Assembly: GCA_001179505.1 (NCBI GenBank)
Contig: CDMY01000182.1
Span: forward strand, 1 to 64,000
DNA: 64,000 nucleotides
Source of the DNA: Vitrella brassicaformis CCMP3155
Lineage: Eukaryota > Protista > Chromerida
Direction: 5' to 3'
Shown here piece by piece: positions 11,630 to 64,000 of this stretch (within the stretch, counting starts at the first letter, position 1; each line of letters begins with the position of its first letter). Below the pieces are notes generated by a model, which saw only the letters and a program-made list of their open reading frames with translations, ran no database searches and had not been told where the DNA came from. Made by a program: the position numbers and the translations under genes.

Positions 11630-11910
11630 GCTGTCACGCCCATCGGAAAGATGTCACGCCCGCCGGAAAGATGTCTTTCTGCCTCAGTGAGCTGTCTGGA
11701 GCTCGAGAAAGCTGTCTTTCTGTGCAGAAAGCTGTCTTTCTGTATGGAAAGCTGTCTTTCTGTGGCAGAAAGCTGTCTTTCTGTATGGAAAGCTGACTTT
11801 TTGTACAGAAAGCTGGCTTTTTGATGGACCATCTGGCTTTCTGCAATACAGTAAGTATCGCATAAATGCAATACAGTAGGTATCGCAATAGAGTAAGTAT
11901 CGCAATACAG
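11630..11910. repeat. Degenerate minisatellite: ~20-bp GAAAGCTGTCTTTCTGT units followed by GCAATACAGTA(A/G)GTATC units
   Basis: Directly visible tandem copies. Related units recur at 12218-12315. Confidence 0.85.
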
Positions 11911-11924
11911 TGTGACATACGTTA

Positions 11925-12215
11925 ACTCATAGCGCAACGGCAGGCAGAGTCTGTCGGTCTCTCATGAAACGAACTGCGTCAACATCGATCAACCCTCAAT
12001 CATGCGACAAACATGCCAGCACCATCCTCAGCGCCCGCCTGGCGTATCTTCCAGCGGCGCCGCCCACCACGCACACACATACTCGCACTACGCGCCAACG
12101 CAACAGACAGACGAGCACGAACCCACCCCATCACCTGGCCATACGACTTGTCTGCCCACGCAGCCTTGGTGCGCAGCTTCTCAACCAGGCGGCTGAAAAA
12201 ACCGTTGCAATACAT
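11925..12215 (-). mobile_element. 3' fragment of a CRE-like non-LTR retrotransposon, family B
   Basis: Encodes FFSRLVEKLRTKAAWADKSYGQVMGWVRARLSVALARSASMCVRGGRRRW, matching the C-terminal helix consensus of CRE-like RLE elements. Its 3' tail recurs at 33579-33666. Confidence 0.7.
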
Positions 12216-55187: not shown

Positions 55188-58100
55188 CTACAGGCGACGC
55201 GCAGCAGCGGCCTTGACTTCGTAGTGGTCCACCCAGCGGCCTGTCGGCGTGACGAATTTGGTGGGGTCGTCGTCCTTAGTCGATCGGCTCATCTTGCACG
55301 AGGCGGCAAGCTCTTCATAGTCAAAGGACTTGCAGCTGGTCTCCTCCAGACACTTGCGGGCGCATGAGGCGGCCTTCTTGACGGTGAAGACGGGGAAGTC
55401 GCCGGACACCAACAACTCCTTCTCCGAATACCTGTGGCCACACACACCAAGACACGGCACAAAATGTGATGCATGGACAGTGTGTTGCAGATGCGTGCCT
55501 GTCGAATTGCAGCAGAGGGTTTTCGCCTTCTACGGTGGTGAGGTCGACTCCCCCGGTGGTGATTTCAGCTCCCTCAGTCTCCATGAGGGGTGAGAATTCG
55601 AGTGGCAGTCTCATGAAGGTGTCGTTGGTCTTGAGGTACAGGACGCCTTGGCCGCCCGACCACAAAGTGCGCGACAGATCGCACGCATCGGGGTCCGTGT
55701 AGCACACTGTCCGGATAATGAATGCAATGCAGCACACAATGACACAGAGAAACAAACAAACAGAGAGACAGACCGACAGACAGACCGACAGACAGACCGA
55801 CAGACAGACCGACAGACAGACAGACAGACAGAAAGCGAGACAGAGAGGGAGAGGACGTGACATGAGCCTGATGGATGGATGTTGGCGGTTCATGTGTGTA
55901 TGTGTGTGTTGGTGAGGTGCGTACCCTGGAGTCCGTCGGTTTCCTTGAGGAAGTGTGCGACGTTGATTCTGAGTTCGGTCTGTCCCTTGGGCGGGATGAT
56001 TCCGTGGGGCGTGCCGGCCATGGTCATCCAGTGGTGTGCTGAGATGGGCATGTAGTGGATAGCGGTGCCCGTGGTGGGGTACGCCGAAGTGGCCGAAACG
56101 GCCTTGTGTGTCGTGGCGCTCTTGAGCCCGACCTTGATGTGCTTGTCGCTCTGCGGGTTGAAGGCGTCGGCGTGCGTGATGCCATGGACGTTCTCGTACA
56201 AGAAGTGGATGGGGCCGCTCTCCTCGAGCACCACCTGGAAGTTGATGGTCCCCGCCCCGGCGTACTTGAAGCCGCTCCAGTGCACCGTCACGTCGTGCTC
56301 ATCGACCTCCACGTACACGCCATCCGCCGTCGACAACTCGGACGATGCGTACCCGTTGATCACCTGACCAAACAAGTCAATGCGATGCGGCCACACACAC
56401 GGAGGATGGACGCCAAGTGGATAGATGAGTGCGCGTCTACTGACCCCGTCGTAGCCGAGTAGGATTGAGCCGTCGAGTGAAACCTTCATGGTTGAGTAGA
56501 TGCCACCGAAGTACGGGACAGGGAAGGGCAGAGCCACCTCCGTCTCCCTCTCGCCAGATTCAAACGTGAGCTTGTTCTCAGCCGTCTTGTTCTCGAACCA
56601 GAAGAAGTCACCTGAACAAGACAAGTATTCTCATATATGTTTCCCTTATCTCACTACTTCGTCTCAGCGGCTTCTACCAGTGGTCATGACGTAGTCGGGG
56701 GCGGTGGGGATCTGAGTGTCCATCCCCAGCTGCGCGCTGTACATCAGGCCCTTGACCGTATCCTCATTAGATATCTGACCAACGGCGGGACCCATGCGCA
56801 TCGCGGAAGAAATGTAATGGTCGTGACGCTGACTGACCTTGACTTTGTAGGTGTTAGCTGTGTTTGACGGGATGCGCTCCCGGATGCTGGCGGGGGATAC
56901 GCCGAAAGAGGCCCCCTCACATGTGAGTGTGAGTGTCTTGCTTGTGGCAACCTCCCGGCCGGTGGGCGAGCCTTCGTTGGTCGCCAGGTGCAGAGTGGCC
57001 GTGCGGGTGCCGCTCTTGGACGGGATGCAGCGGACCTGATGAAAGAAACAACAAACCACCCAACACAACACAACACATACAAAGAGACGAAGAGACAAAG
57101 AGACGGACAGGCAGACGTCAGCTCACTGGGTGTGGTAGGTCTGACCTTGAGAAGGTGGGATTCCTGGTTGGGCGAGACGGTGACGATCATTCCCCTAGGG
57201 GGCAGCACTTCAAAGTCGTTGGCATGGTCTCCCGTCACGTCTTGCACTTGCACGGCCAGGACACCGGGGCCACTGTTGGCTATGGGCACCTCAACAGCAG
57301 GGCTGGGCACGTGCACAGCACTCTTGCCCACTGACAGACTCGGAGGCAGAGCCGGCGACAAACTCGACCCGCCCAACGCCAGCAGCCGCAGGGAAGAAGT
57401 CACACCGCTGCCGCCGCTCTGGATGTCCAGCGTGGCCCTGCATACATGAAGCCAATACGGCAAAAAGGTGTCTGGATGGATGGGTGCATTGCAACGCCAG
57501 CATGTGTCCCAAACATGCATACCCGTATTGGCCGGCAGTTACAGCGTCGACTTCGACTGTCACATCGACTGTGGCGCCCGCTGCTACTGTGGCCGTCGCC
57601 GGATACGACACGGCGCTGGTCAAACCCGCCGTCATCTGCACTCATGCATACATGTCAGGACACCCACCTCTTCTGCACTACCATGGACAGACAGTCAGTC
57701 ATTTGGTGGATGGCTTACCTGCAGGGCCTTGCTGACGTTGAGTCTCTTCTCGGTGACGGTCAGGAACGTGTCGTTTTCAGAGAGGGGCGTGCCACTCTGC
57801 AACAGGACGTCCTTCTGCTGGGCCCACGTGAGGTCAGGATTGACCGCCAACATGAGCGCCACAGCACCCGTCACGTGCGGCACGGCCATCGATGTGCCGT
57901 TGGCCGTGTACAGCCTTCAGAAACGTGCCATCCATCCACATAGAATAAATAATACATGAGCACGCACATTCAGGGATCACCACAAGTGTGCATGTCGCTT
58001 ACGATTCATTGAATAGGCTGGTTGGCACGGTGGAGACGATGTTGGCCCCGGGCGCTGCGAGGTGGATGGTCTCGTTGCCGTACGAGGCCCAGTAGGGGAT

Positions 58101-58733
58101 GTGGCCCTCCTCATCATGCGCCGTAACCGTCACCATGTTGGGAATGCCGAAAGTCGCCGGGAAGTCGGGCATGGCGTCGTTGTCGTAACCCTCGTTGCCT
58201 GATATGGTATACGTACATGAATCATCACGCGAGCATCCATCCTGTGTAGATGTGTGTCTCGTTGCCTGCCTGCGGCACAGATGAATAGCTGGTTGGCCTT
58301 CATGTTTGCGACAATGGCGTTGTAAAGTGCGGCGCTGAATCGGACTCCTCCCCACGAGTTGCTCGTCACGTGCGCCCCGTGGTCCACCGCATACTCGAGG
58401 GCCTCGATCGCATCCGACATCAGACCTAACAAACACATACATGCATGTACAGATGGGCCACACAGAGGCAGAGAGCATCACTCAGAGGGCATCAGTGATT
58501 GAGTCAACTAATGACGTACCACTGCCGTCAGCCGCAAGGAACTTGAGTGCCATGATCTGGGCATTCCACGCAACACCGCTGACTTCAGCTCCATTGTTGC
58601 CCTTGGCGGCAATGACACCAGCAACTGAAACACATATGTACACGAACAGACAGACAGACAGACAGACAGGCGTGTTGTCAGCGACCCTGGCTCCACAGTC
58701 GATTGACGTCCATCGGCCGGTTGATCTGCCAGC

Positions 58734-58774
<41 letters not shown>

Positions 58775-58776
58775 GC

Positions 58777-58807
<31 letters not shown>

Positions 58808-58890
58808 GTCTGTCTGTCTGTCTGTCGCTCTGTCTGTCTGTCTGTCGGTCTGTCTGTCTGTCTGTCGGTCTGTCTGTCTGTCTGTCGGTG

Positions 58891-58928
<38 letters not shown>

Positions 58929-61900
58929 CAAATGGTGTGTCCGCCTTTATACCATGTGTTCCGTGTCCGGCGTCATCCATGGGGTCGCCATCCTGGTTGC
59001 GGAAGTCGTAGCCGTAGATGTCATCAATGTAGCCGTTGCCTGCCAGCCCACACACGCACCCACCCATGTACCCGACACATACATGCATGGTAGCTGGATG
59101 TATGTGCCTGCCTGCCTGCCAACATACCGTCGTCGTCAACGCCTGCTTGTCCGTTGAGCTCGGCCTGGTTGACCCAAAGGTTGTCCTTGAGGTCGTTATG
59201 GGTGTAGTCGACCCCCGTGTCGAGCACGGCCACGACAGGGCCGTTGGGCAGCTTGGCGGACGAGCCAGTTGTGACGGACCATGCGTCGGGGGCTCCGATG
59301 GACATCATGCCCCACTGGTTGCCGAAGGAGGGGTCATTGGGAACTGTGCCTGTGGCCTTGACCACCTGGTCCTCCTCGCAAGCCGCCACAGTCTCGTCGC
59401 TGCAGATGTCGTCCACATGCCTCTGGAACTCGGTGATGTTGGCAGGACTGCTCGGGTCGACATATAACTCCAAAATGTCCACGTGGCTACGATTCATCTT
59501 CCGGTGCTCCTTGATGGCTAAGCACACACACGCAGAATATGACTCGGGGAGCGAGGGAGCAATGCACATGTTGACTCTTGTCCACGCCTGCCTGCCTCCC
59601 TGGCTGTCTGCCTTTCGTGCGGCCATCCATATCTACATAGGTGCACAGGTACCGTCTCCGAGTTTGTCGTCGATGTCTGTGAGCCCGCTGAGTCGTCTGC
59701 GGCCTGCCTCTGCAGCGGTAGCGTTGTGGTAGACGACCAGGATGCGGGGAGGCAGCCCCAGAGCGGTGATGCTGCCGCTGGGGGGAGTGCCAGTCAGCTC
59801 ACGCCCCGACTTGCCGCCTTTGCCACCGGGCAGGTCGGCCTTATCCGCAGACGTGCTGCAGCAACCCAACGACACACACAGAGGTCGGAATGCACGGCAT
59901 GAATGTCTTCGGCATGAATGTCTTGCTGACGTGTGTTCTTCTTTGGCCTGGAGTGCTCGTCTGGCGGTTTGTGTGGCGTTGGTGACGTTGTTGAGGTCGA
60001 GTGACTCCTGGATGTCGGCCTCGATGGCAGCGTGTGCATTCGACAGCTTGGCAAAGTCATCGGCAGTGAGGAAAAGTGGCAGCGGCATGGGCAGCCAGGG
60101 GACCGTGCCAGTGGTGTCGCTCAGGTGGAACAGACCCAGGCTGTACAGCATCGATATGTCCGCACTGATCGATCCACGGATCGACGGATGGACACCAATG
60201 ACAACGAGGCATAACAAAGATATACAAACACACAGAATCACATGGGGCTGGCCATGTTGTTGTTGGCCTGTTACTTGAATAGTTCTGTGTTGATGACGTC
60301 TCTGTTTCTGGAGATCATCCAGAGGTCGAGGTCGGTGAATACGGGCGAAAAGGCGGCGGCGGTGGACTCCTGTGTGTTGGCTGGGGAGGTCGTGAAGAAA
60401 CCCATGTTGACCATCTCGCTGAACAACGCAGACCCAGCCGTTGCATTCAACTCGCCAAACAATGACGCACTCGACTGCACACTCCGACAGAGACAGACAG
60501 GAATACAACACAATGCATATGGGTGTTTGTCGCGAACGCTCCCCCTTGGCTTGCCGGCTTGCTGACCGTGTCCAATGTGACGGCGAGTATCTTGTTGTCG
60601 TCGTCCACCTTGACCGAACGGATGAGGTATTCATTGGCCTTTGCCTCCGTGTAGTTCCAGTCGCCTGACACTCGGAAAAGGGTGCTAGAGGGGAAGTCCA
60701 CATACGACAGCCGACGGGAGCCACCACCACCCTGCTTGGCCTTGAGCTGACGAGCCTGCACAAAGCAAGCACACACAGGGAGAGAGGGGAGGTAGAGAGC
60801 GAGACACCTCTGGCTGGTGATTGACTGATGTTCCATCCATCCCCACGTACCTACCGGTGGGGGTGTGATGTTTTTCCAGTAGAAGTCGGGGGTGGCGGCG
60901 TTGATAGCAGTAGTGTCGAATGACGAGAGGAGGACCATGTTCCACTTGTGCAGCACGTGGTCCTTGGCCGCACCCACCAACGACTCCCACGTCGTACCTG
61001 CCTTCATACCCAGATCACGAGGAGTCACCTCACTAACACAGACACAACACGCAACCATGTTGCACTCATGTGGTGATGTCGTGTTCCCTCTCAGCTGGCT
61101 GTCCGGGTGGTTAACTGACCTCTTGCGCCACGCGGATGTTTCAAAAAGACTGAGGTCGAAGTTGGAGAGGTGCGCTGAGGCAGGGAACTCACCGATGGCG
61201 CAGTCGTGGAAGTTGGGGCGCCAGTTGGACGACCTGAGGAAGGCAAGATCAATCACCCATGATGATTGCAGGGTGTGGTGTCCTACTTGAAGAATCCGAT
61301 GGGTTCTGCGTGCCCCTCGTACACGGCCCAGAAGCGGGCGCCGCCATAGTTGGATGCGGTGGGTGTGGTGAGGTTCTGGTACTCGAAGCCCCATGGCTTG
61401 ATGGCGCCGTCGCGGGAGCGGATGAAGCCCCACGGGTGCCACACGCCATCCTGGCTCTTGTAGACGCCCCATGGGTAGAACGTGTTGTTGTAGCTGCCAC
61501 ACAAGACACACGCAGTTTGATACCTTGGTCGGCTACTCGCTGGCGCTTTCGCATATGACATCTGTGTGTTTACCTGAAGTATCCGATAGGCACGATTTTC
61601 CAGGAGACGTCCTTCCAGGTGCTGGCCGTTGGGGACATTTCCATTGTGGGGTCGGCTGGGCTGTAGGACCCTCCGTCGGTCGCTGGGGGAGCTGGAGCAG
61701 CCTCCAGACGCCGGCCAGCGACCTCTTCCTGGTAGAACAGGCCGCATGAGATGCATCGCTGGATGCCTGGGGAGTTCCAGCGCTGGATGCCTGGGGAGCC
61801 CCAGCGCTGGATGCCACCGGACATCCATCGGGAGAAGCCGGGAGGCAGCAGCATGCCGTCCTCGCCACCCTCGGTGCTGCGGGCGATGCCGGGTGACATC

Positions 61901-64000
61901 CACCGCTGAATGCCACCGGACATCCAGCGCTGAATGCCGGGGGCCCCCCAGTCACCCCAGGAGCGTTGGATGCCGGGAGAGCCCCAGTCGCTCCACCGCT
62001 GCAGGCCGGGAGAGCCCCAGAAGCTGCGCTGGATGCCAGGAGACGTCCATCCCCAGGTGCGATGGATGCCGACCGGCATCCAGATGCGCTGAATACCGGG
62101 CGACCCCCAGCCCCACCGTTGAAAGCCCGGGGACATCCAACCCCATCGCTGAATGCCGGGGGGCGCCCAGCCCCACCGCTGAATACCGGGCGACATCCAG
62201 CCCCACCGGGCGATGCCCTGCACACATACCACACAACACATATGTGATAGCGGGGCATCAAGTCATGCAGGCAGGTTGGTTACGATGGGCATCCAGTTGT
62301 TCCAGCGACCTAGCCCCACATGGCCCAGGACCCCGAAGTAGCTGTCGAGCCAGCGGGCGATGCCCGTCCATCCCCAACCGTAGGCAGCAGGGTGCCATCT
62401 CGCAATGCCGAACCACCCCCTGGTGCATTCATATGCCGCCAGACAGACAGACAGACAGACGGCAAGAAAATGGGCAAAGCAGCGACAAACCTTCTCTCCT
62501 TTTCTTTTCTGGATTGGCTCACCAGCCGTGGTAGGCAGGACTCACCCAGCGGCCCTTGGCAACCCATCCCTACACATACGAGCAGACGCATCCGTGAAAT
62601 CCATTCATACTAATAGCGCATCCATCCCTCTCGCTCTTCAGTACACTCACCCATCCCCAGTAGTCGTCGAATGACCAGCGGCCGTTGCCCACCCACCTGA
62701 ACCAGACCGTGGACAAGAGGAGGCCAATCCATTCATTGCCTATGTATGTACGTGTGTATATGTGCGGTGCGCGTCCATCACCCGAATCCGGTGTATTCGT
62801 AAGGGTTGTATCCTCGCGCAATGCCGACCCATCCCCTGAAACAAGACAACACAGAGACACATACCTCATCAACACTCCTTCTCGTGTATGATGCCACATG
62901 CCAACATTTACCAGCCCGGGTTCCAGCGGGAGATGTCTTGAGGAGAGAGAACACGGACACAGACAAGAACTGGTGTTATCCGTGCCTCTGCAGTAGGGCT
63001 AGCTGCCTTTCACTCGGCCCACCCACCTTCAATGGTCCGATTCTCCTCTGCTCTAGCAATGCCGGTCCAGCCCCAGTCGGGATTCCAGCGGGCAATGCCA
63101 ACGTAGCCCCTGAAGGAGTCCGAGGCAAGGGAGGCATGCAACTGGATGCAACCCTCTCTGTCATGCATCTAGCGTACCATGACCGTTGGATACCCGGATG
63201 GCCGCTAACCGACACAATCACACACAAGAAAGCGAGTCCAGCCACGGCCTGTCTTCCGCGTGTGTGTGCATGTGTGCGCGCAATACTGTAGGGGATTCCA
63301 ACGCTCGTGGCCTGAAATGGCGCCTCTGCGCGAGTAAGGAAATCAAGAGATTCGACCCCGGACGTAAGCATTTGATACCTGATCGCGGCTTACCCTTCGT
63401 AGTACCACGGGGTCCAGCGTGCCATGCCAAACCAGCCCCTGGTAATCCATACAAGCATAGGCAAATAGGGTTACACGAGCACCACGGCACCTTCACATGC
63501 ATGTGGTCTTTGTGCGCACCAGCTGAAGTATGCGGGATTGAACCAGCGGGCAGTGCCCACCCAGCCCTACAACATCAATTGTTCCATCCAACTCGGGCCC
63601 ATGCACTCCCCCTTGTCTGTCTTCCTCCCTTTGTGCATAGTGTGGTGATGCGTACCCATCCCCAGATGTCGCTCCATCTCCAGTTGGCCCCGCCGACCCA
63701 GTTCCACCCGTGAAATGTGCCGAAGAAGCGAGACACGTCCGATATGGGGAAGAACGGCAGAGTCTTCATGCCGGTCTTGCTGAAGGGCCCGCCCTCGGAC
63801 CACGACAGGGCCGGCGCAAAGGCGAGTTCGTCCCATGGGGATGCTTTCGAGTGGTCGACGAAGTCGGCCGAGCCGCCAGGCAGGAAATATCGAGCTGAGA
63901 AGAGGCCCGGACTCTCGCGAAACCCGAAGCTGTGGAACTGTCCACCACTGGGCAGCCACGCCTCTGCGGCACGCACAGCAGGACGGATGACGTGTCAAAT
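55188..64000 (-). CDS. Multi-domain S8 subtilisin-like serine protease, 5' end outside the window: GxxRW repeat array - unknown domain - prodomain - S8 - Ig-like - NIDO-like - PAN/Apple
   Basis: Catalytic triad VLDTG (Asp 59219-59221), HGTH (His 58963-58965) and GTSMA (Ser 57890-57892), plus NSWGG and AAGN oxyanion motifs. PAN-type [17 protein letters not shown] near the C-terminus. Exon phases were followed from ~63900 into the catalytic domain. Confidence 0.92.
58733..58928. repeat. (TCTG)n microsatellite inside the subtilase intron after HGTH
   Basis: Directly visible, about 195 bp. Confidence 0.95.
61756..63710 (-). repeat. Coding array of ~30 G-x-x-R-W / WG-rich peptide repeats
   Basis: 16 units lie in exon 61574-62217 ([10 protein letters not shown] type). 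14 more lie in ten small exons plus the end of the upstream exon (GWxGIARWxP type). Confidence 0.9.

What the first reader, a model, noticed from the sequence alone, without database searches (positions are those of the whole stretch)
61574..63710. About 30 Trp/Arg/Gly peptide repeats fused in cis to a subtilisin: candidate self-processing peptide-precursor system
Seen in sequence: hand splicing (GT-AG, phases consistent) gives ...[72 protein letters not shown]...[103 protein letters not shown]. Sixteen GIQRW(GW)(M/G)SP-type units follow, the block is closed by AGRRL, and the frame continues into an intact S8 prodomain and catalytic domain. The Arg is invariant while the spacers vary, the pattern of a repeated processing site around variable cores. 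Established: multi-core precursors are cut by dedicated proteases (fungal Kex2-processed repeat proteins), precursor-enzyme fusions exist (BURP-domain burpitides, borosins), S8 domains act as peptide proteases/macrocyclases (cyanobactin PatA/PatG), and short W/R-rich peptides are often membrane-active. Inference: this polypeptide may release a library of ~8-16-residue Trp-rich linear or cyclic peptides. A structural role (wall or coacervate-forming repeat) is the alternative. I know of no described alveolate example.
Basis: partly seen in the sequence, partly recalled or inferred. Interest (0 to 1): 0.88.

Follow-up and report, generated by a model that had tools for sequence, protein, structure and literature searches.

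The report
Tryptophan-rich repeats ahead of an algal protease
In the alga Vitrella brassicaformis one long gene encodes about thirty short tryptophan-rich units, each ending in a single arginine, followed by an intact subtilisin-type protease whose substrate pocket looks built to cut after arginine; whether it actually cuts its own repeats, and what the pieces would do, is untested.

Summary
On the minus strand, eleven mini-exons plus one 644-nt exon encode a 372-aa block: 19% Gly, 15% Trp, 33 Arg against 1 Lys. It has about 31 units, each ending in [PV]-G-I-[QA]-R, usually followed by W. All introns are GT-AG and in phase. Contigs from RNA runs show spliced joints from the repeats into the protease, and a transcript of a truncated paralogue links repeats to the prodomain region. 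It is very probably one gene.

Two corrections. About 450 residues with no known domain lie between AGRRL and the protease. The protease is a thermitase/SUB1-type S8A enzyme, not kexin-like.

New here: the S1 pocket has Glu and Asp at the BPN' 156 and 166 positions, which predicts cutting after Arg or Lys and so matches the invariant Arg. Also, RRL occurs three times (0.18 expected), the first closing the repeat block; this is the Toxoplasma ASP5 motif.

No relatives of the repeats were found outside Vitrella among 1.84 billion representative proteins.

The repeats are probably a disordered N-terminal region that this protease can cut. Whether the peptides are products or by-products is open.

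The scan has already noted a similar repeat-plus-S8 gene on another piece of this genome, with the same open question.

The parts
63656..63967 (-). Exon 1 as seen in the window. The true first exon or exons lie beyond base 64000. It encodes 86 non-repeat residues and then the first degenerate W-rich unit (63689-63709).
   Evidence: The reading frame is open, with a likely acceptor AG at 63969-63968. The donor is confirmed by the RNA contig joint 63566|63656.
62284..63566 (-). Ten mini-exons of 25-136 nt: 63566-63520, 63438-63394, 63325-63287, 63204-63178, 63109-63027, 62936-62912, 62835-62782, 62696-62651, 62569-62523 and 62419-62284. Each encodes one to three type-A units (GW-x-G-I-A-R-W... 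of 9-17 aa). Several of the splices fall inside a Trp codon.
   Evidence: All introns are GT-AG with consistent phase. Two further introns are confirmed by RNA joints. The same joins appear in the annotated paralogue protein P0003.
61574..62217 (-). Exon 12: about 16 type-B units ([10 protein letters not shown], 8-12 aa), one acidic interruption, then AGRRL (61705-61719) and a Pro/Ala/Ser-rich linker.
   Evidence: Contigs of RNA run X1 cover it with no mismatches (records 5-7). The single-sequence AlphaFold model is coil with pLDDT 37. No Pfam family matches.
59900..61493 (-). Middle region of about 450 aa in exons 13-18: 61493-61287, 61233-61120, 61032-60855, 60755-60567, 60474-60275 and 60164-59931. 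No known domain. It has seven N-x-S/T sequons, a threefold PWG mini-repeat, and a second RRL at 60705-60716.
   Evidence: Joints 61233|61287 and 60164|60275 are seen in X1. Joint 61032|61120 is seen in X2 record 14, and X1 record 4 spans exons 15-16-17. Pfam finds nothing, the fold model has pLDDT 32, and there are no homologues.
59330..59855 (-). Prodomain-like segment (exon 19, 59855-59653, plus the head of exon 20). It contains a third RRL (AGRRRL, 59690-59707) and ends ...QVVK-ATGTV just before the PNDP start of the mature enzyme.
   Evidence: Its position and beta-alpha-beta pattern suggest a prodomain. This is inference only, because Pfam I9 was not detected in the separate exon pieces. 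Joints 59855|59931 and 59517|59653 are seen in RNA contigs.
57719..59329 (-). S8A catalytic domain in exons 20-25: 59517-59128, 59039-58953, 58624-58520, 58425-58270, 58198-58003 and 57914-57719. Catalytic residues: Asp 59219-59221, His 58963-58965, oxyanion Asn 58194-58196, Ser 57890-57892.
   Evidence: PF00082 hits are collinear across the exons. The best PDB matches are deseasin MCP-01, Tk-subtilisin, Plasmodium SUB1 and thermitase. The GC-AG intron 58199-58269 is confirmed by an RNA joint.
58164..58193 (-). S1-pocket determinants: Glu at the BPN' 156 position (58191-58193) and Asp at the BPN' 166 position (58164-58166, immediately before the conserved F-P-A).
   Evidence: HMMER alignments place the Asp opposite thermitase N170 and deseasin H212. 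The Savinase alignment starts at query residue 11 against chain residue 160, which is BPN' 166. The role of positions 156 and 166 in P1 preference is described in PMC3378952.
55188..57718 (-). Probable C-terminal continuation of the same gene: several exons with no Pfam family, then a PAN/Apple exon (55421-55188) that ends in a stop.
   Evidence: The exon-chain model comes from my own script only, with no RNA check. PAN_1 scores E=1.1e-9, above its cut-off. Whether these exons belong to the same transcript is unverified.

Best explanation
This is one large multi-exon gene of Vitrella brassicaformis. It encodes a modular subtilase that is probably secreted. From N to C terminus the in-window part holds: (1) a 372-aa block, predicted disordered, of about 31 Gly/Trp-rich units each ending in one Arg ([PV]-G-I-[QA]-R, then W); (2) an RRL motif; (3) about 450 residues with no known domain; (4) a prodomain-like segment; (5) an intact thermitase/SUB1-type S8A catalytic domain. 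The S1 pocket of that domain carries two acidic residues (Glu at BPN' 156, Asp at 166), so it should prefer Arg or Lys at P1.

Most likely the repeat block is a lineage-specific N-terminal extension, a sticky Trp/Arg tether or pro-region, that is also a built-in substrate. Once the enzyme or a paralogue is active, it would cut after the regularly spaced Arg residues and dismantle the block into 8-17-residue Trp-rich peptides. I think those peptides are more likely by-products of removing or releasing the tether than the purpose of the gene.

Shown: the repeat anatomy, the splicing, the single reading frame, the intact catalytic residues, and the acidic residues at positions 156 and 166. Inferred: secretion, P1 specificity, self-cleavage, and the tether role.
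For: One gene. A 1,320-aa stop-free model covers 25 exons. Contigs from RNA runs (mainly X1; 61032|61120 only in X2) show GT-AG or GC-AG joints at 63566|63656, 63438|63520, 63325|63394, 61233|61287, 61032|61120, 60164|60275, 59855|59931, 59517|59653 and 58198|58270. Other contigs span exons 10/11-12 and 15-16-17. These joints are absent from X3 and X4, whose contigs run through the introns and so are genomic DNA. The MMETSP transcript ORF P0001 of the paralogue runs from the repeats to the prodomain with identical joins.

Arg is under selection. There are 33 Arg against 1 Lys in the block, compared with 16:20 in the middle region and 3:8 in S8. Five different Arg codons are used. dN/dS against the paralogue is 0.43.

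Protease. PF00082 matches are collinear and the triad is intact. It is S8A by its PDB neighbours.

S1 pocket. Asp aligns with the 166 position and Glu with 156. G166D in BPN' shifts specificity to P1 Lys, and 156 also controls P1 preference (PMC3378952). The nearest solved homologue, MCP-01, prefers Pro or basic residues at P1 (PMC11294657). An algal S8 wall-lytic enzyme, sporangin, needs Arg or Lys at P1 (PMC8643629).

Disorder. AlphaFold gives coil with pLDDT 37 and the ESM Atlas model of P0003 has pLDDT 0.33.

Extracellular hints. There are 16 N-x-S/T sequons and a PAN exon downstream.
Against: No experiment or read data bear on cleavage. P4 is Gly, whereas subtilisins usually want a hydrophobic P4. 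The 156/166 assignment rests on sequence alignment of a single exon, not on a structure. The signal peptide is outside the window, so secretion is inferred. The prodomain was not recognised by Pfam. The exon 12 to exon 13 joint of this copy is seen only indirectly: a contig ends at 61574 with 43 further letters, and the paralogue transcript uses that join. Read laying left 29 joints unlisted, so the joints of exons 4-11 of this copy were not individually seen. The RRL motif closing the block suggests another protease could release the block whole.
Confidence: 0.45

Rival explanations
1. Peptide factory. The purpose of the repeat block is to be cut into a library of about 30 Trp-rich peptides, linear or cyclised, with a biological activity of their own (antimicrobial, signalling). 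The cis-encoded S8 domain would be the dedicated maturase.
For: The units are regularly spaced, with an invariant Arg-terminated flank and variable interiors. The S1 pocket is predicted to accept Arg (PMC3378952). Precursor and protease are co-encoded in one transcript. S8A enzymes are known to process peptide precursors after Arg; the lanthipeptide protease EpiP appears among the PDB matches. The scan's notes report a similar repeat-plus-S8 gene elsewhere in the genome (a lead only).
Against: Each peptide would carry only one Arg, at its C terminus, and several carry Asp or Glu. The net charge of the whole block is only +15 over 372 aa, far below classic Trp/Arg antimicrobial peptides. Unit length and sequence drift freely, and units are gained, lost and inverted in the paralogue, which is more typical of low-complexity regions than of conserved bioactive cores. 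No cyclase-type features or other modifying enzymes were seen. There are no relatives outside Vitrella.
Confidence: 0.15
2. Structural or adhesive module released whole. The Trp/Arg/Gly block would be a disordered, sticky domain (wall-binding, matrix-forming or condensate-forming) that works as a polymer. It would be separated from the rest of the polyprotein at the RRL motif by a Golgi aspartyl protease of the ASP5/plasmepsin V type, or stay attached as an anchor. On this reading the Arg residues are kept for Arg-Trp contacts, not as cleavage sites.
For: RRL occurs 3 times in the model against 0.18 expected (7 of 20,000 shuffles reach 3). Each time it reads [GS]-R-R-L-[ES]. The first closes the repeat block, and all three are kept in the paralogue transcript. 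ASP5 of Toxoplasma cuts RRLxx after Leu, including at sites far from the N terminus (PMC4764566). The strict use of Arg over Lys (33:1) fits aromatic-Arg sticker chemistry (general knowledge). The block is predicted to be coil, and its P-G turns and high Gly content resemble elastomeric repeat proteins (general knowledge).
Against: Whether Vitrella has a clade-D (ASP5-type) aspartyl protease was not tested. The third RRL lies inside the prodomain-like segment, an odd place for a maturation cut. This reading does not explain why the linked protease has an acidic S1 pocket. Nothing shows wall or matrix localisation.
Confidence: 0.3
3. The repeats have no function of their own: a neutrally expanding low-complexity insertion in the pro-region of a subtilase, tolerated because the pro-region is discarded.
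For: The repeats are confined to this lineage. Unit number and order are unstable between paralogues. No fold is predicted.
Against: dN/dS is 0.43 rather than about 1. Arg, Gly and Ile positions are kept across units despite synonymous codon changes. Eleven introns keep phase and splice sites. The R:K ratio is strongly skewed only here.
Confidence: 0.07
4. The repeats and the protease are separate genes, or the joined model is an artefact.
For: The exon 12 to exon 13 joint of this copy is not directly listed. The contigs are short (the longest piece on the locus is under 450 nt). In the paralogous locus the public annotation splits the region into four small genes.
Against: The reading frame is unbroken across 25 exons. 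Spliced joints are seen at every other step. One MMETSP transcript ORF spans repeats to prodomain in the paralogue. There is no stop codon and no unaccounted coding gap.
Confidence: 0.03

Closest known systems
Apicomplexan SUB1/SUB2-type and bacterial thermitase-type S8A subtilisins (PDB 4tr2, 8pol, 4lvn, 1thm; deseasin MCP-01, 3vv3)
   Same: The catalytic domain is clearly of this kind. It has the D-H-N-S residues and the DDDGNGYIDD calcium-loop insert. The best sequence matches in the PDB are these enzymes. A long N-terminal region precedes the mature enzyme, as in SUB1 and SUB2.
   Different: None of these enzymes is known to carry a tandem Trp/Gly/Arg array. The S1 pocket here is acidic (Glu156, Asp166), whereas it is polar in PfSUB1 (Ser537; PMC3378952) and has His at the 166 position in MCP-01.
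Fungal Kex2-processed repeat proteins and multi-core RiPP precursors (ustiloxin UstA; epichloecyclin GigA with kexB, PMC10540207)
   Same: Many short tandem units, each ending in a basic residue, paired with a subtilase-family protease.
   Different: The fungal precursors use dibasic KR sites cut by a kexin (S8B) encoded by a separate gene. Here the sites are single Arg, the enzyme is S8A, both are on one polypeptide, and about 450 unrelated residues lie between them.
Peptide-processing S8A proteases of bacteria (lanthipeptide LanP such as NisP and EpiP; cyanobactin PatA/PatG)
   Same: These are S8A domains that mature ribosomal peptides. LanP enzymes cut after Arg (general knowledge). EpiP appears among the weak PDB matches.
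   Different: Their precursors are separate small genes with leader or recognition sequences, not a 30-unit array fused to the enzyme. No macrocyclase features were examined here.
Chlamydomonas sporangin (hatching enzyme, S8)
   Same: A bacterial-type S8 of a sporangium-forming alga that needs Arg or Lys at P1 and digests wall proteins (PMC8643629). Vitrella also divides inside sporangia (general knowledge).
   Different: No Trp/Arg repeat region has been described for it. No homology beyond the S8 domain was tested here.
Toxoplasma ASP5 (TEXEL, RRLxx) and Plasmodium plasmepsin V (PEXEL) substrates
   Same: Three RRLxx motifs, one of them exactly at the end of the repeat block. ASP5 cuts such motifs after Leu in secretory proteins, including at internal sites (PMC4764566).
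   Different: No evidence that a chromerid enzyme with this specificity exists or acts here. The organism is free-living, so host-cell export is not at issue.
Aromatic/Arg/Gly-rich low-complexity proteins (elastomeric P-G-turn repeats, adhesive or condensate-forming proteins)
   Same: Composition (G 19%, W 15%, R 9%), P-G turns, no predicted fold.
   Different: The resemblance is in composition only, from general knowledge. There is no sequence relationship and no test of material properties.

Membership tests
Peptidase S8 (subtilase), subfamily S8A | Catalytic Asp, His, Ser in that order plus the oxyanion-hole Asn, and a match to PF00082. | tested here: met
   DTG (aa 1043), HGTH (1099), AAGN (1191) and GTSMA (1263) are all present in the spliced model. 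PF00082 hits lie on four exons at collinear profile positions: 2-26, 61-90, 97-151 and 236-276.
Peptidase S8 (subtilase), subfamily S8A | Closest to subtilisin/thermitase-type enzymes rather than kexins. | tested here: met
   The PDB matches are deseasin MCP-01, Tk-subtilisin, Plasmodium SUB1, thermitase, BPN' and Savinase. No kexin or furin appears.
Kexin/furin proprotein convertases (S8B) | A P-domain after the catalytic domain, and dibasic cleavage sites in the substrates. | tested here: not met
   No Pfam hit of any kind in the pieces downstream of the catalytic domain. Each repeat has a single Arg, and only the three RR(R)L sites are dibasic.
Subtilase propeptide (Inhibitor I9) | A match to the I9 family immediately upstream of the mature enzyme. 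| tested here: inconclusive
   No Pfam hit in exon 19 or in the head of exon 20 when scanned separately. The PDB alignments begin only at the mature part. The spliced segment could not be submitted as one piece.
Multi-core ribosomal peptide precursor (KEP-like or RiPP-like) | Tandem cores flanked by a conserved recognition or cleavage motif. | tested here: met
   About 31 units end in G-I-[QA]-R.
Multi-core ribosomal peptide precursor (KEP-like or RiPP-like) | An N-terminal signal peptide on the precursor. | not testable with these tools
   The 5' end of the gene lies beyond base 64000. The paralogue lacks the first exon.
Multi-core ribosomal peptide precursor (KEP-like or RiPP-like) | Released mature peptides detected. 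| not testable with these tools
   There are no proteomic data. This needs peptidomics.
ASP5/plasmepsin V substrates (TEXEL/PEXEL) | An RRLxx (or RxLxE/Q/D) motif in a secretory protein. | tested here: met
   RRLEA, RRLSY and RRLSG lie at aa 456, 682 and 929. Three are observed against 0.18 expected. The consensus is taken from PMC4764566.
ASP5/plasmepsin V substrates (TEXEL/PEXEL) | A cognate clade-D aspartyl protease in the organism, and cleavage after Leu. | not tested
   PMC8540915 includes Vitrella aspartyl proteases in its tree, but the text I read does not say whether one falls in clade D.
PAN/Apple domain proteins | A match to PAN_1 above its cut-off. | tested here: met
   Exon 55421-55191 gives E=1.1e-9 and 38.4 bits against a cut-off of 21.4. 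Whether this exon belongs to the same transcript was not checked.

The most novel reading that the evidence does not exclude
A eukaryotic 'self-contained peptide factory'. A single secreted polyprotein would carry about 30 variable Trp-rich cores, each ending in Arg, together with its own Arg-specific S8A maturase. A second set of RRL sites would first cut the polyprotein into modules. The released 8-17-residue peptides, linear or further modified, would be the functional product. This would be the first cis-encoded multi-core precursor plus protease in an alveolate.
Probability: 0.15. Interest if true: 0.85.

Novelty: new variant of a known kind. Interest (0 to 1): 0.55.

Why it matters
Chromerids are the free-living photosynthetic relatives of apicomplexan parasites, in which SUB1/SUB2-type subtilisins and RRL/PEXEL-type maturation drive egress, invasion and protein export.

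This gene combines three things in one polypeptide: a SUB1-like protease, an array of about 31 identical-looking candidate cleavage sites, and three RRL motifs. That makes it a natural substrate-plus-enzyme construct in which both kinds of processing could be studied.

The match between the invariant Arg and the acidic S1 pocket turns a vague idea ("maybe it processes itself") into a sharp biochemical test that is cheap to run.

If the peptides turned out to be the product, this would be a new route to ribosomal peptide libraries in eukaryotes. If the block is a cleavable sticky tether, it would be a new way of latching a secreted protease.

Tried and rejected
1. Pfam on every exon piece and on the paralogue proteins. 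Nothing matched the repeats, the middle region or the post-S8 exons, apart from S8 itself and PAN.

2. HMMER against 1.84 billion representative proteins with the big repeat exon. Only P0001-P0003 are real, and all three are Vitrella. The other 18 hits are unrelated low-complexity repeats (G[FY][DN]xxG pentads, PGFQN, PGIQQSQSE and the like) and I rejected them as compositional.

3. Word-indexed searches with the repeat exon, P0001 and P0003. Each found only P0003 or the query itself. The length window (0.55-1.75 times the query) means longer proteins, including this gene's own annotation, could not be reached.

4. ESM Atlas searches. No score reached 0.9. Weak structural similarity to beta-solenoids rests on a model with pLDDT 0.33, so I did not use it.

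5. AlphaFold single-sequence models of the middle region and of the repeat exon. pLDDT was 32 and 37, too low for any fold search, so none was run.

6. My first automatic exon-chain models skipped mini-exons and read a TDRQ 'exon' out of the (CTGT)n intron. I corrected them by hand and against the RNA joints.

7. The look-up of encoding contigs for P0001 returned no record.

8. Considered and dropped: cell-wall-binding repeats of the CW_binding or GW type (no Pfam signal), and C-mannosylation WxxW motifs (the spacing does not fit).

9. Literature searches for a described Vitrella subtilisin or a Trp-rich repeat subtilase found nothing relevant. Searches for His211 of MCP-01 and Asn170 of thermitase found no paper in the library, so those two residue roles rest on my memory.

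Full report
**What is there**

The feature lies on the minus strand. Three-frame translation and hand curation of splice sites give a stop-free model of 25 exons and 1,320 residues between 63967 and 57719. The true 5' end lies beyond base 64000: an acceptor AG precedes 63967 and the paralogue lacks the upstream exon.

The finding's coordinates are exact. Base 61574 is the donor end of the large exon and 63709 is the first Trp-rich unit.

**The repeat block**

- The block covers residues 87-458 of the model (372 aa). Its composition is Gly 19%, Trp 15% and Arg 9%, with 33 Arg against 1 Lys and a net charge of +15.
- Splitting after each Arg gives about 31 pieces of 8-17 residues.
- There are two unit types. 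Type A (GW-x-G-I-A-R-W..., 9-17 aa) sits in ten mini-exons of 25-136 nt. Type B ([10 protein letters not shown], 8-12 aa) occurs about 16 times in one 644-nt exon.
- Around the Arg, P5 is Pro or Val, P4 is Gly (27/33), P3 is Ile (20/33), P2 is Gln or Ala, and P1' is Trp (21/33).
- The Arg is encoded by CGC, CGG, CGA, AGA and CGT, so it is kept at protein level.
- Elsewhere in the same protein R:K is 16:20 (middle region) and 3:8 (S8 domain), so the Arg-only pattern is special to the block.
- The core motif occurs 16 times in this gene and essentially nowhere else in the six-frame translation of the window.

**One gene or two**

Public runs holding this DNA fall into two kinds. X3 and X4 hold about 85% of the words and their contigs run through introns, so they are genomic. 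X1 and X2 hold 43% and 12% and show joints with CT..AC ends, which are GT..AG on the gene's strand.

The joints seen are 63566|63656, 63438|63520, 63325|63394, 61233|61287, 61032|61120 (X2), 60164|60275, 59855|59931, 59517|59653 and a GC-AG intron at 58198|58270. Contigs also link exons 10/11 to 12 and exons 15-16-17.

The exon 12 to exon 13 join of this copy is seen only as a contig that stops at 61574 and carries 43 further letters. The tool left 29 joints unlisted.

Independent support comes from P0001, an MMETSP transcript ORF. It belongs to a truncated paralogue and runs in one frame from type-B repeats through AGRRL-equivalent, the middle region and into the prodomain-like segment. It uses the same joins as my model. 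I put gene unity at about 0.9 or better.

**What lies between the repeats and the protease**

In fact about 450 residues in six to seven exons lie between AGRRL (aa 454-458) and the prodomain-like segment (from about aa 913).

This region has no Pfam family. It has no homologue among proteins of 302-962 aa and gives no confident fold. It carries 7 of the model's 16 N-x-S/T sequons.

**The protease**

- PF00082 matches four exons at collinear profile positions.
- Asp1043, His1099, Asn1191 and Ser1263 are all present.
- The nearest solved sequences are deseasin MCP-01, Tk-subtilisin, Plasmodium SUB1 and thermitase. It is therefore S8A, not kexin-like.
- The prodomain could not be confirmed by Pfam because it is split between exons.

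**A new link between enzyme and repeats**

In exon 24 the sequence after the oxyanion Asn reads N-E-G-...-M-P-D-F-P-A. HMMER aligns the Asp with thermitase N170 and deseasin H212. The Savinase and BPN' alignments start at that residue against the position that is 166 in BPN' numbering (the numbering conversion is from my own knowledge). The Glu after the Asn is BPN' position 156.

[quoted passage not shown] The enzyme is therefore predicted to prefer Arg or Lys at P1, the one residue that never varies in the repeats.

Two further points fit this. The closest solved homologue, MCP-01, prefers Pro or basic residues at P1 (PMC11294657). An algal wall-lytic S8, sporangin, requires Arg or Lys at P1 (PMC8643629).

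Two cautions apply. P4 in the repeats is Gly, which is not what subtilisins usually like. The pocket assignment rests on alignment, not on a structure.

**A second processing signal**

RRL occurs three times, at aa 456, 682 and 929, each as [GS]-R-R-L-[ES]. Only 0.18 are expected and only 7 of 20,000 shuffles reach three. All three are kept in P0001.

RRLxx is the consensus of Toxoplasma ASP5, which cuts after Leu, including at internal sites of secretory proteins (PMC4764566). Whether Vitrella has such an enzyme was not tested. This opens the possibility that the block is released whole in the secretory pathway.

**Relatives**

Searching 1.84 billion representative proteins with the big exon found only three genuine hits, all from Vitrella. 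P0002 and P0003 (CEM32503, CEM32504) lie on contig CDMY01000758.1 of V. brassicaformis CCMP3155; P0001 is an MMETSP transcript that matches that paralogue.

That locus (L001 10221-13781) is a 78-96% identical copy. It starts inside the first intron, ends inside the prodomain, and has deletions and an internal inversion. It lacks the S8 domain but is transcribed.

dN/dS between the two copies is 0.43 for the repeats and 0.27 for the middle region. No Chromera or other alveolate relative appeared.

The scan's own notes list a similar gene on another piece of this genome with about 29 Trp-rich repeats plus S8. An earlier follow-up on it also found no relatives and left cleavage untested. I treat this as a lead only.

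**Reading**

I favour this account: a disordered, sticky N-terminal extension of a secreted, Arg-directed S8A protease that the enzyme itself can dismantle (0.45).

- The whole-block structural or adhesive reading, with release at RRL, is a serious rival (0.30).
It is weakened by the low charge of the peptides and by the instability of unit number and order between paralogues.
- Neutral low-complexity expansion (0.07) and separate genes (0.03) are unlikely.

**Limits**

- The signal peptide and the first exon are outside the window.
- Spliced protein models could not be submitted to the structure or family tools, so the S8 domain and the prodomain were examined exon by exon.
- Read laying could be called only once and listed only part of the joints.

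Noticed in passing
window 61705-61713, 60705-60716, 59690-59698 (minus strand): Three RRL motifs ([GS]RRL[ES]) in one protein against 0.18 expected, all kept in the paralogue transcript. They match the Toxoplasma ASP5 'RRLxx' cleavage consensus. The first closes the repeat block.
   Followed up: partly
L001 10221-13781 (V. brassicaformis CDMY01000758.1): A truncated paralogue at 78-96% identity. It starts inside intron 1, ends inside the prodomain and has no S8 domain. It has deletions and an inverted segment (11698-11933) in the type-B repeats. It is annotated as four small genes, yet it is transcribed as one ORF (MMETSP P0001).
   Followed up: partly
window 58734-58928 and 58646-58669: A (CTGT) microsatellite of about 49 copies, with a short (ACAG)6 nearby, inside the intron between the exon carrying the catalytic His and the next S8 exon. 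Similar CAGA/CTGT/GCCT runs in other introns (62440-62460, 59105-59120, 59586-59613) create chimeric contig joints in the public assemblies, for example 59120|62440.
   Followed up: no
window 58199-58269: A GC-AG intron splits the AAG|N oxyanion motif of the protease. It is supported by a spliced contig in the RNA runs X1 and X2.
   Followed up: yes
window 61400-61490 (exon 13): A threefold mini-repeat of about 13 aa built around P-W-G ([VF]-x-[KR]-S-x-D-G). The paralogue has a deletion between PWG copies that shifts the frame, and the frame is restored further on by a retained intron in its transcript.
   Followed up: no
window 55188-57718 (minus strand): Downstream of the S8 domain there are further long open exons with no Pfam family, including a 228-aa exon at 55926-56609. 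They are followed by a PAN/Apple exon (55191-55421) that ends in a stop. This probably belongs to the same gene and resembles the 'subtilase-PAN' family that the scan notes elsewhere in this genome.
   Followed up: partly
L001 1197-9795 (minus strand): The paralogue's neighbour is a 1,575-aa protein with ANF_receptor, Ephrin_rec_like and TRP-like hits. This is the chimeric receptor/channel type that the scan also notes elsewhere in this genome.
   Followed up: no
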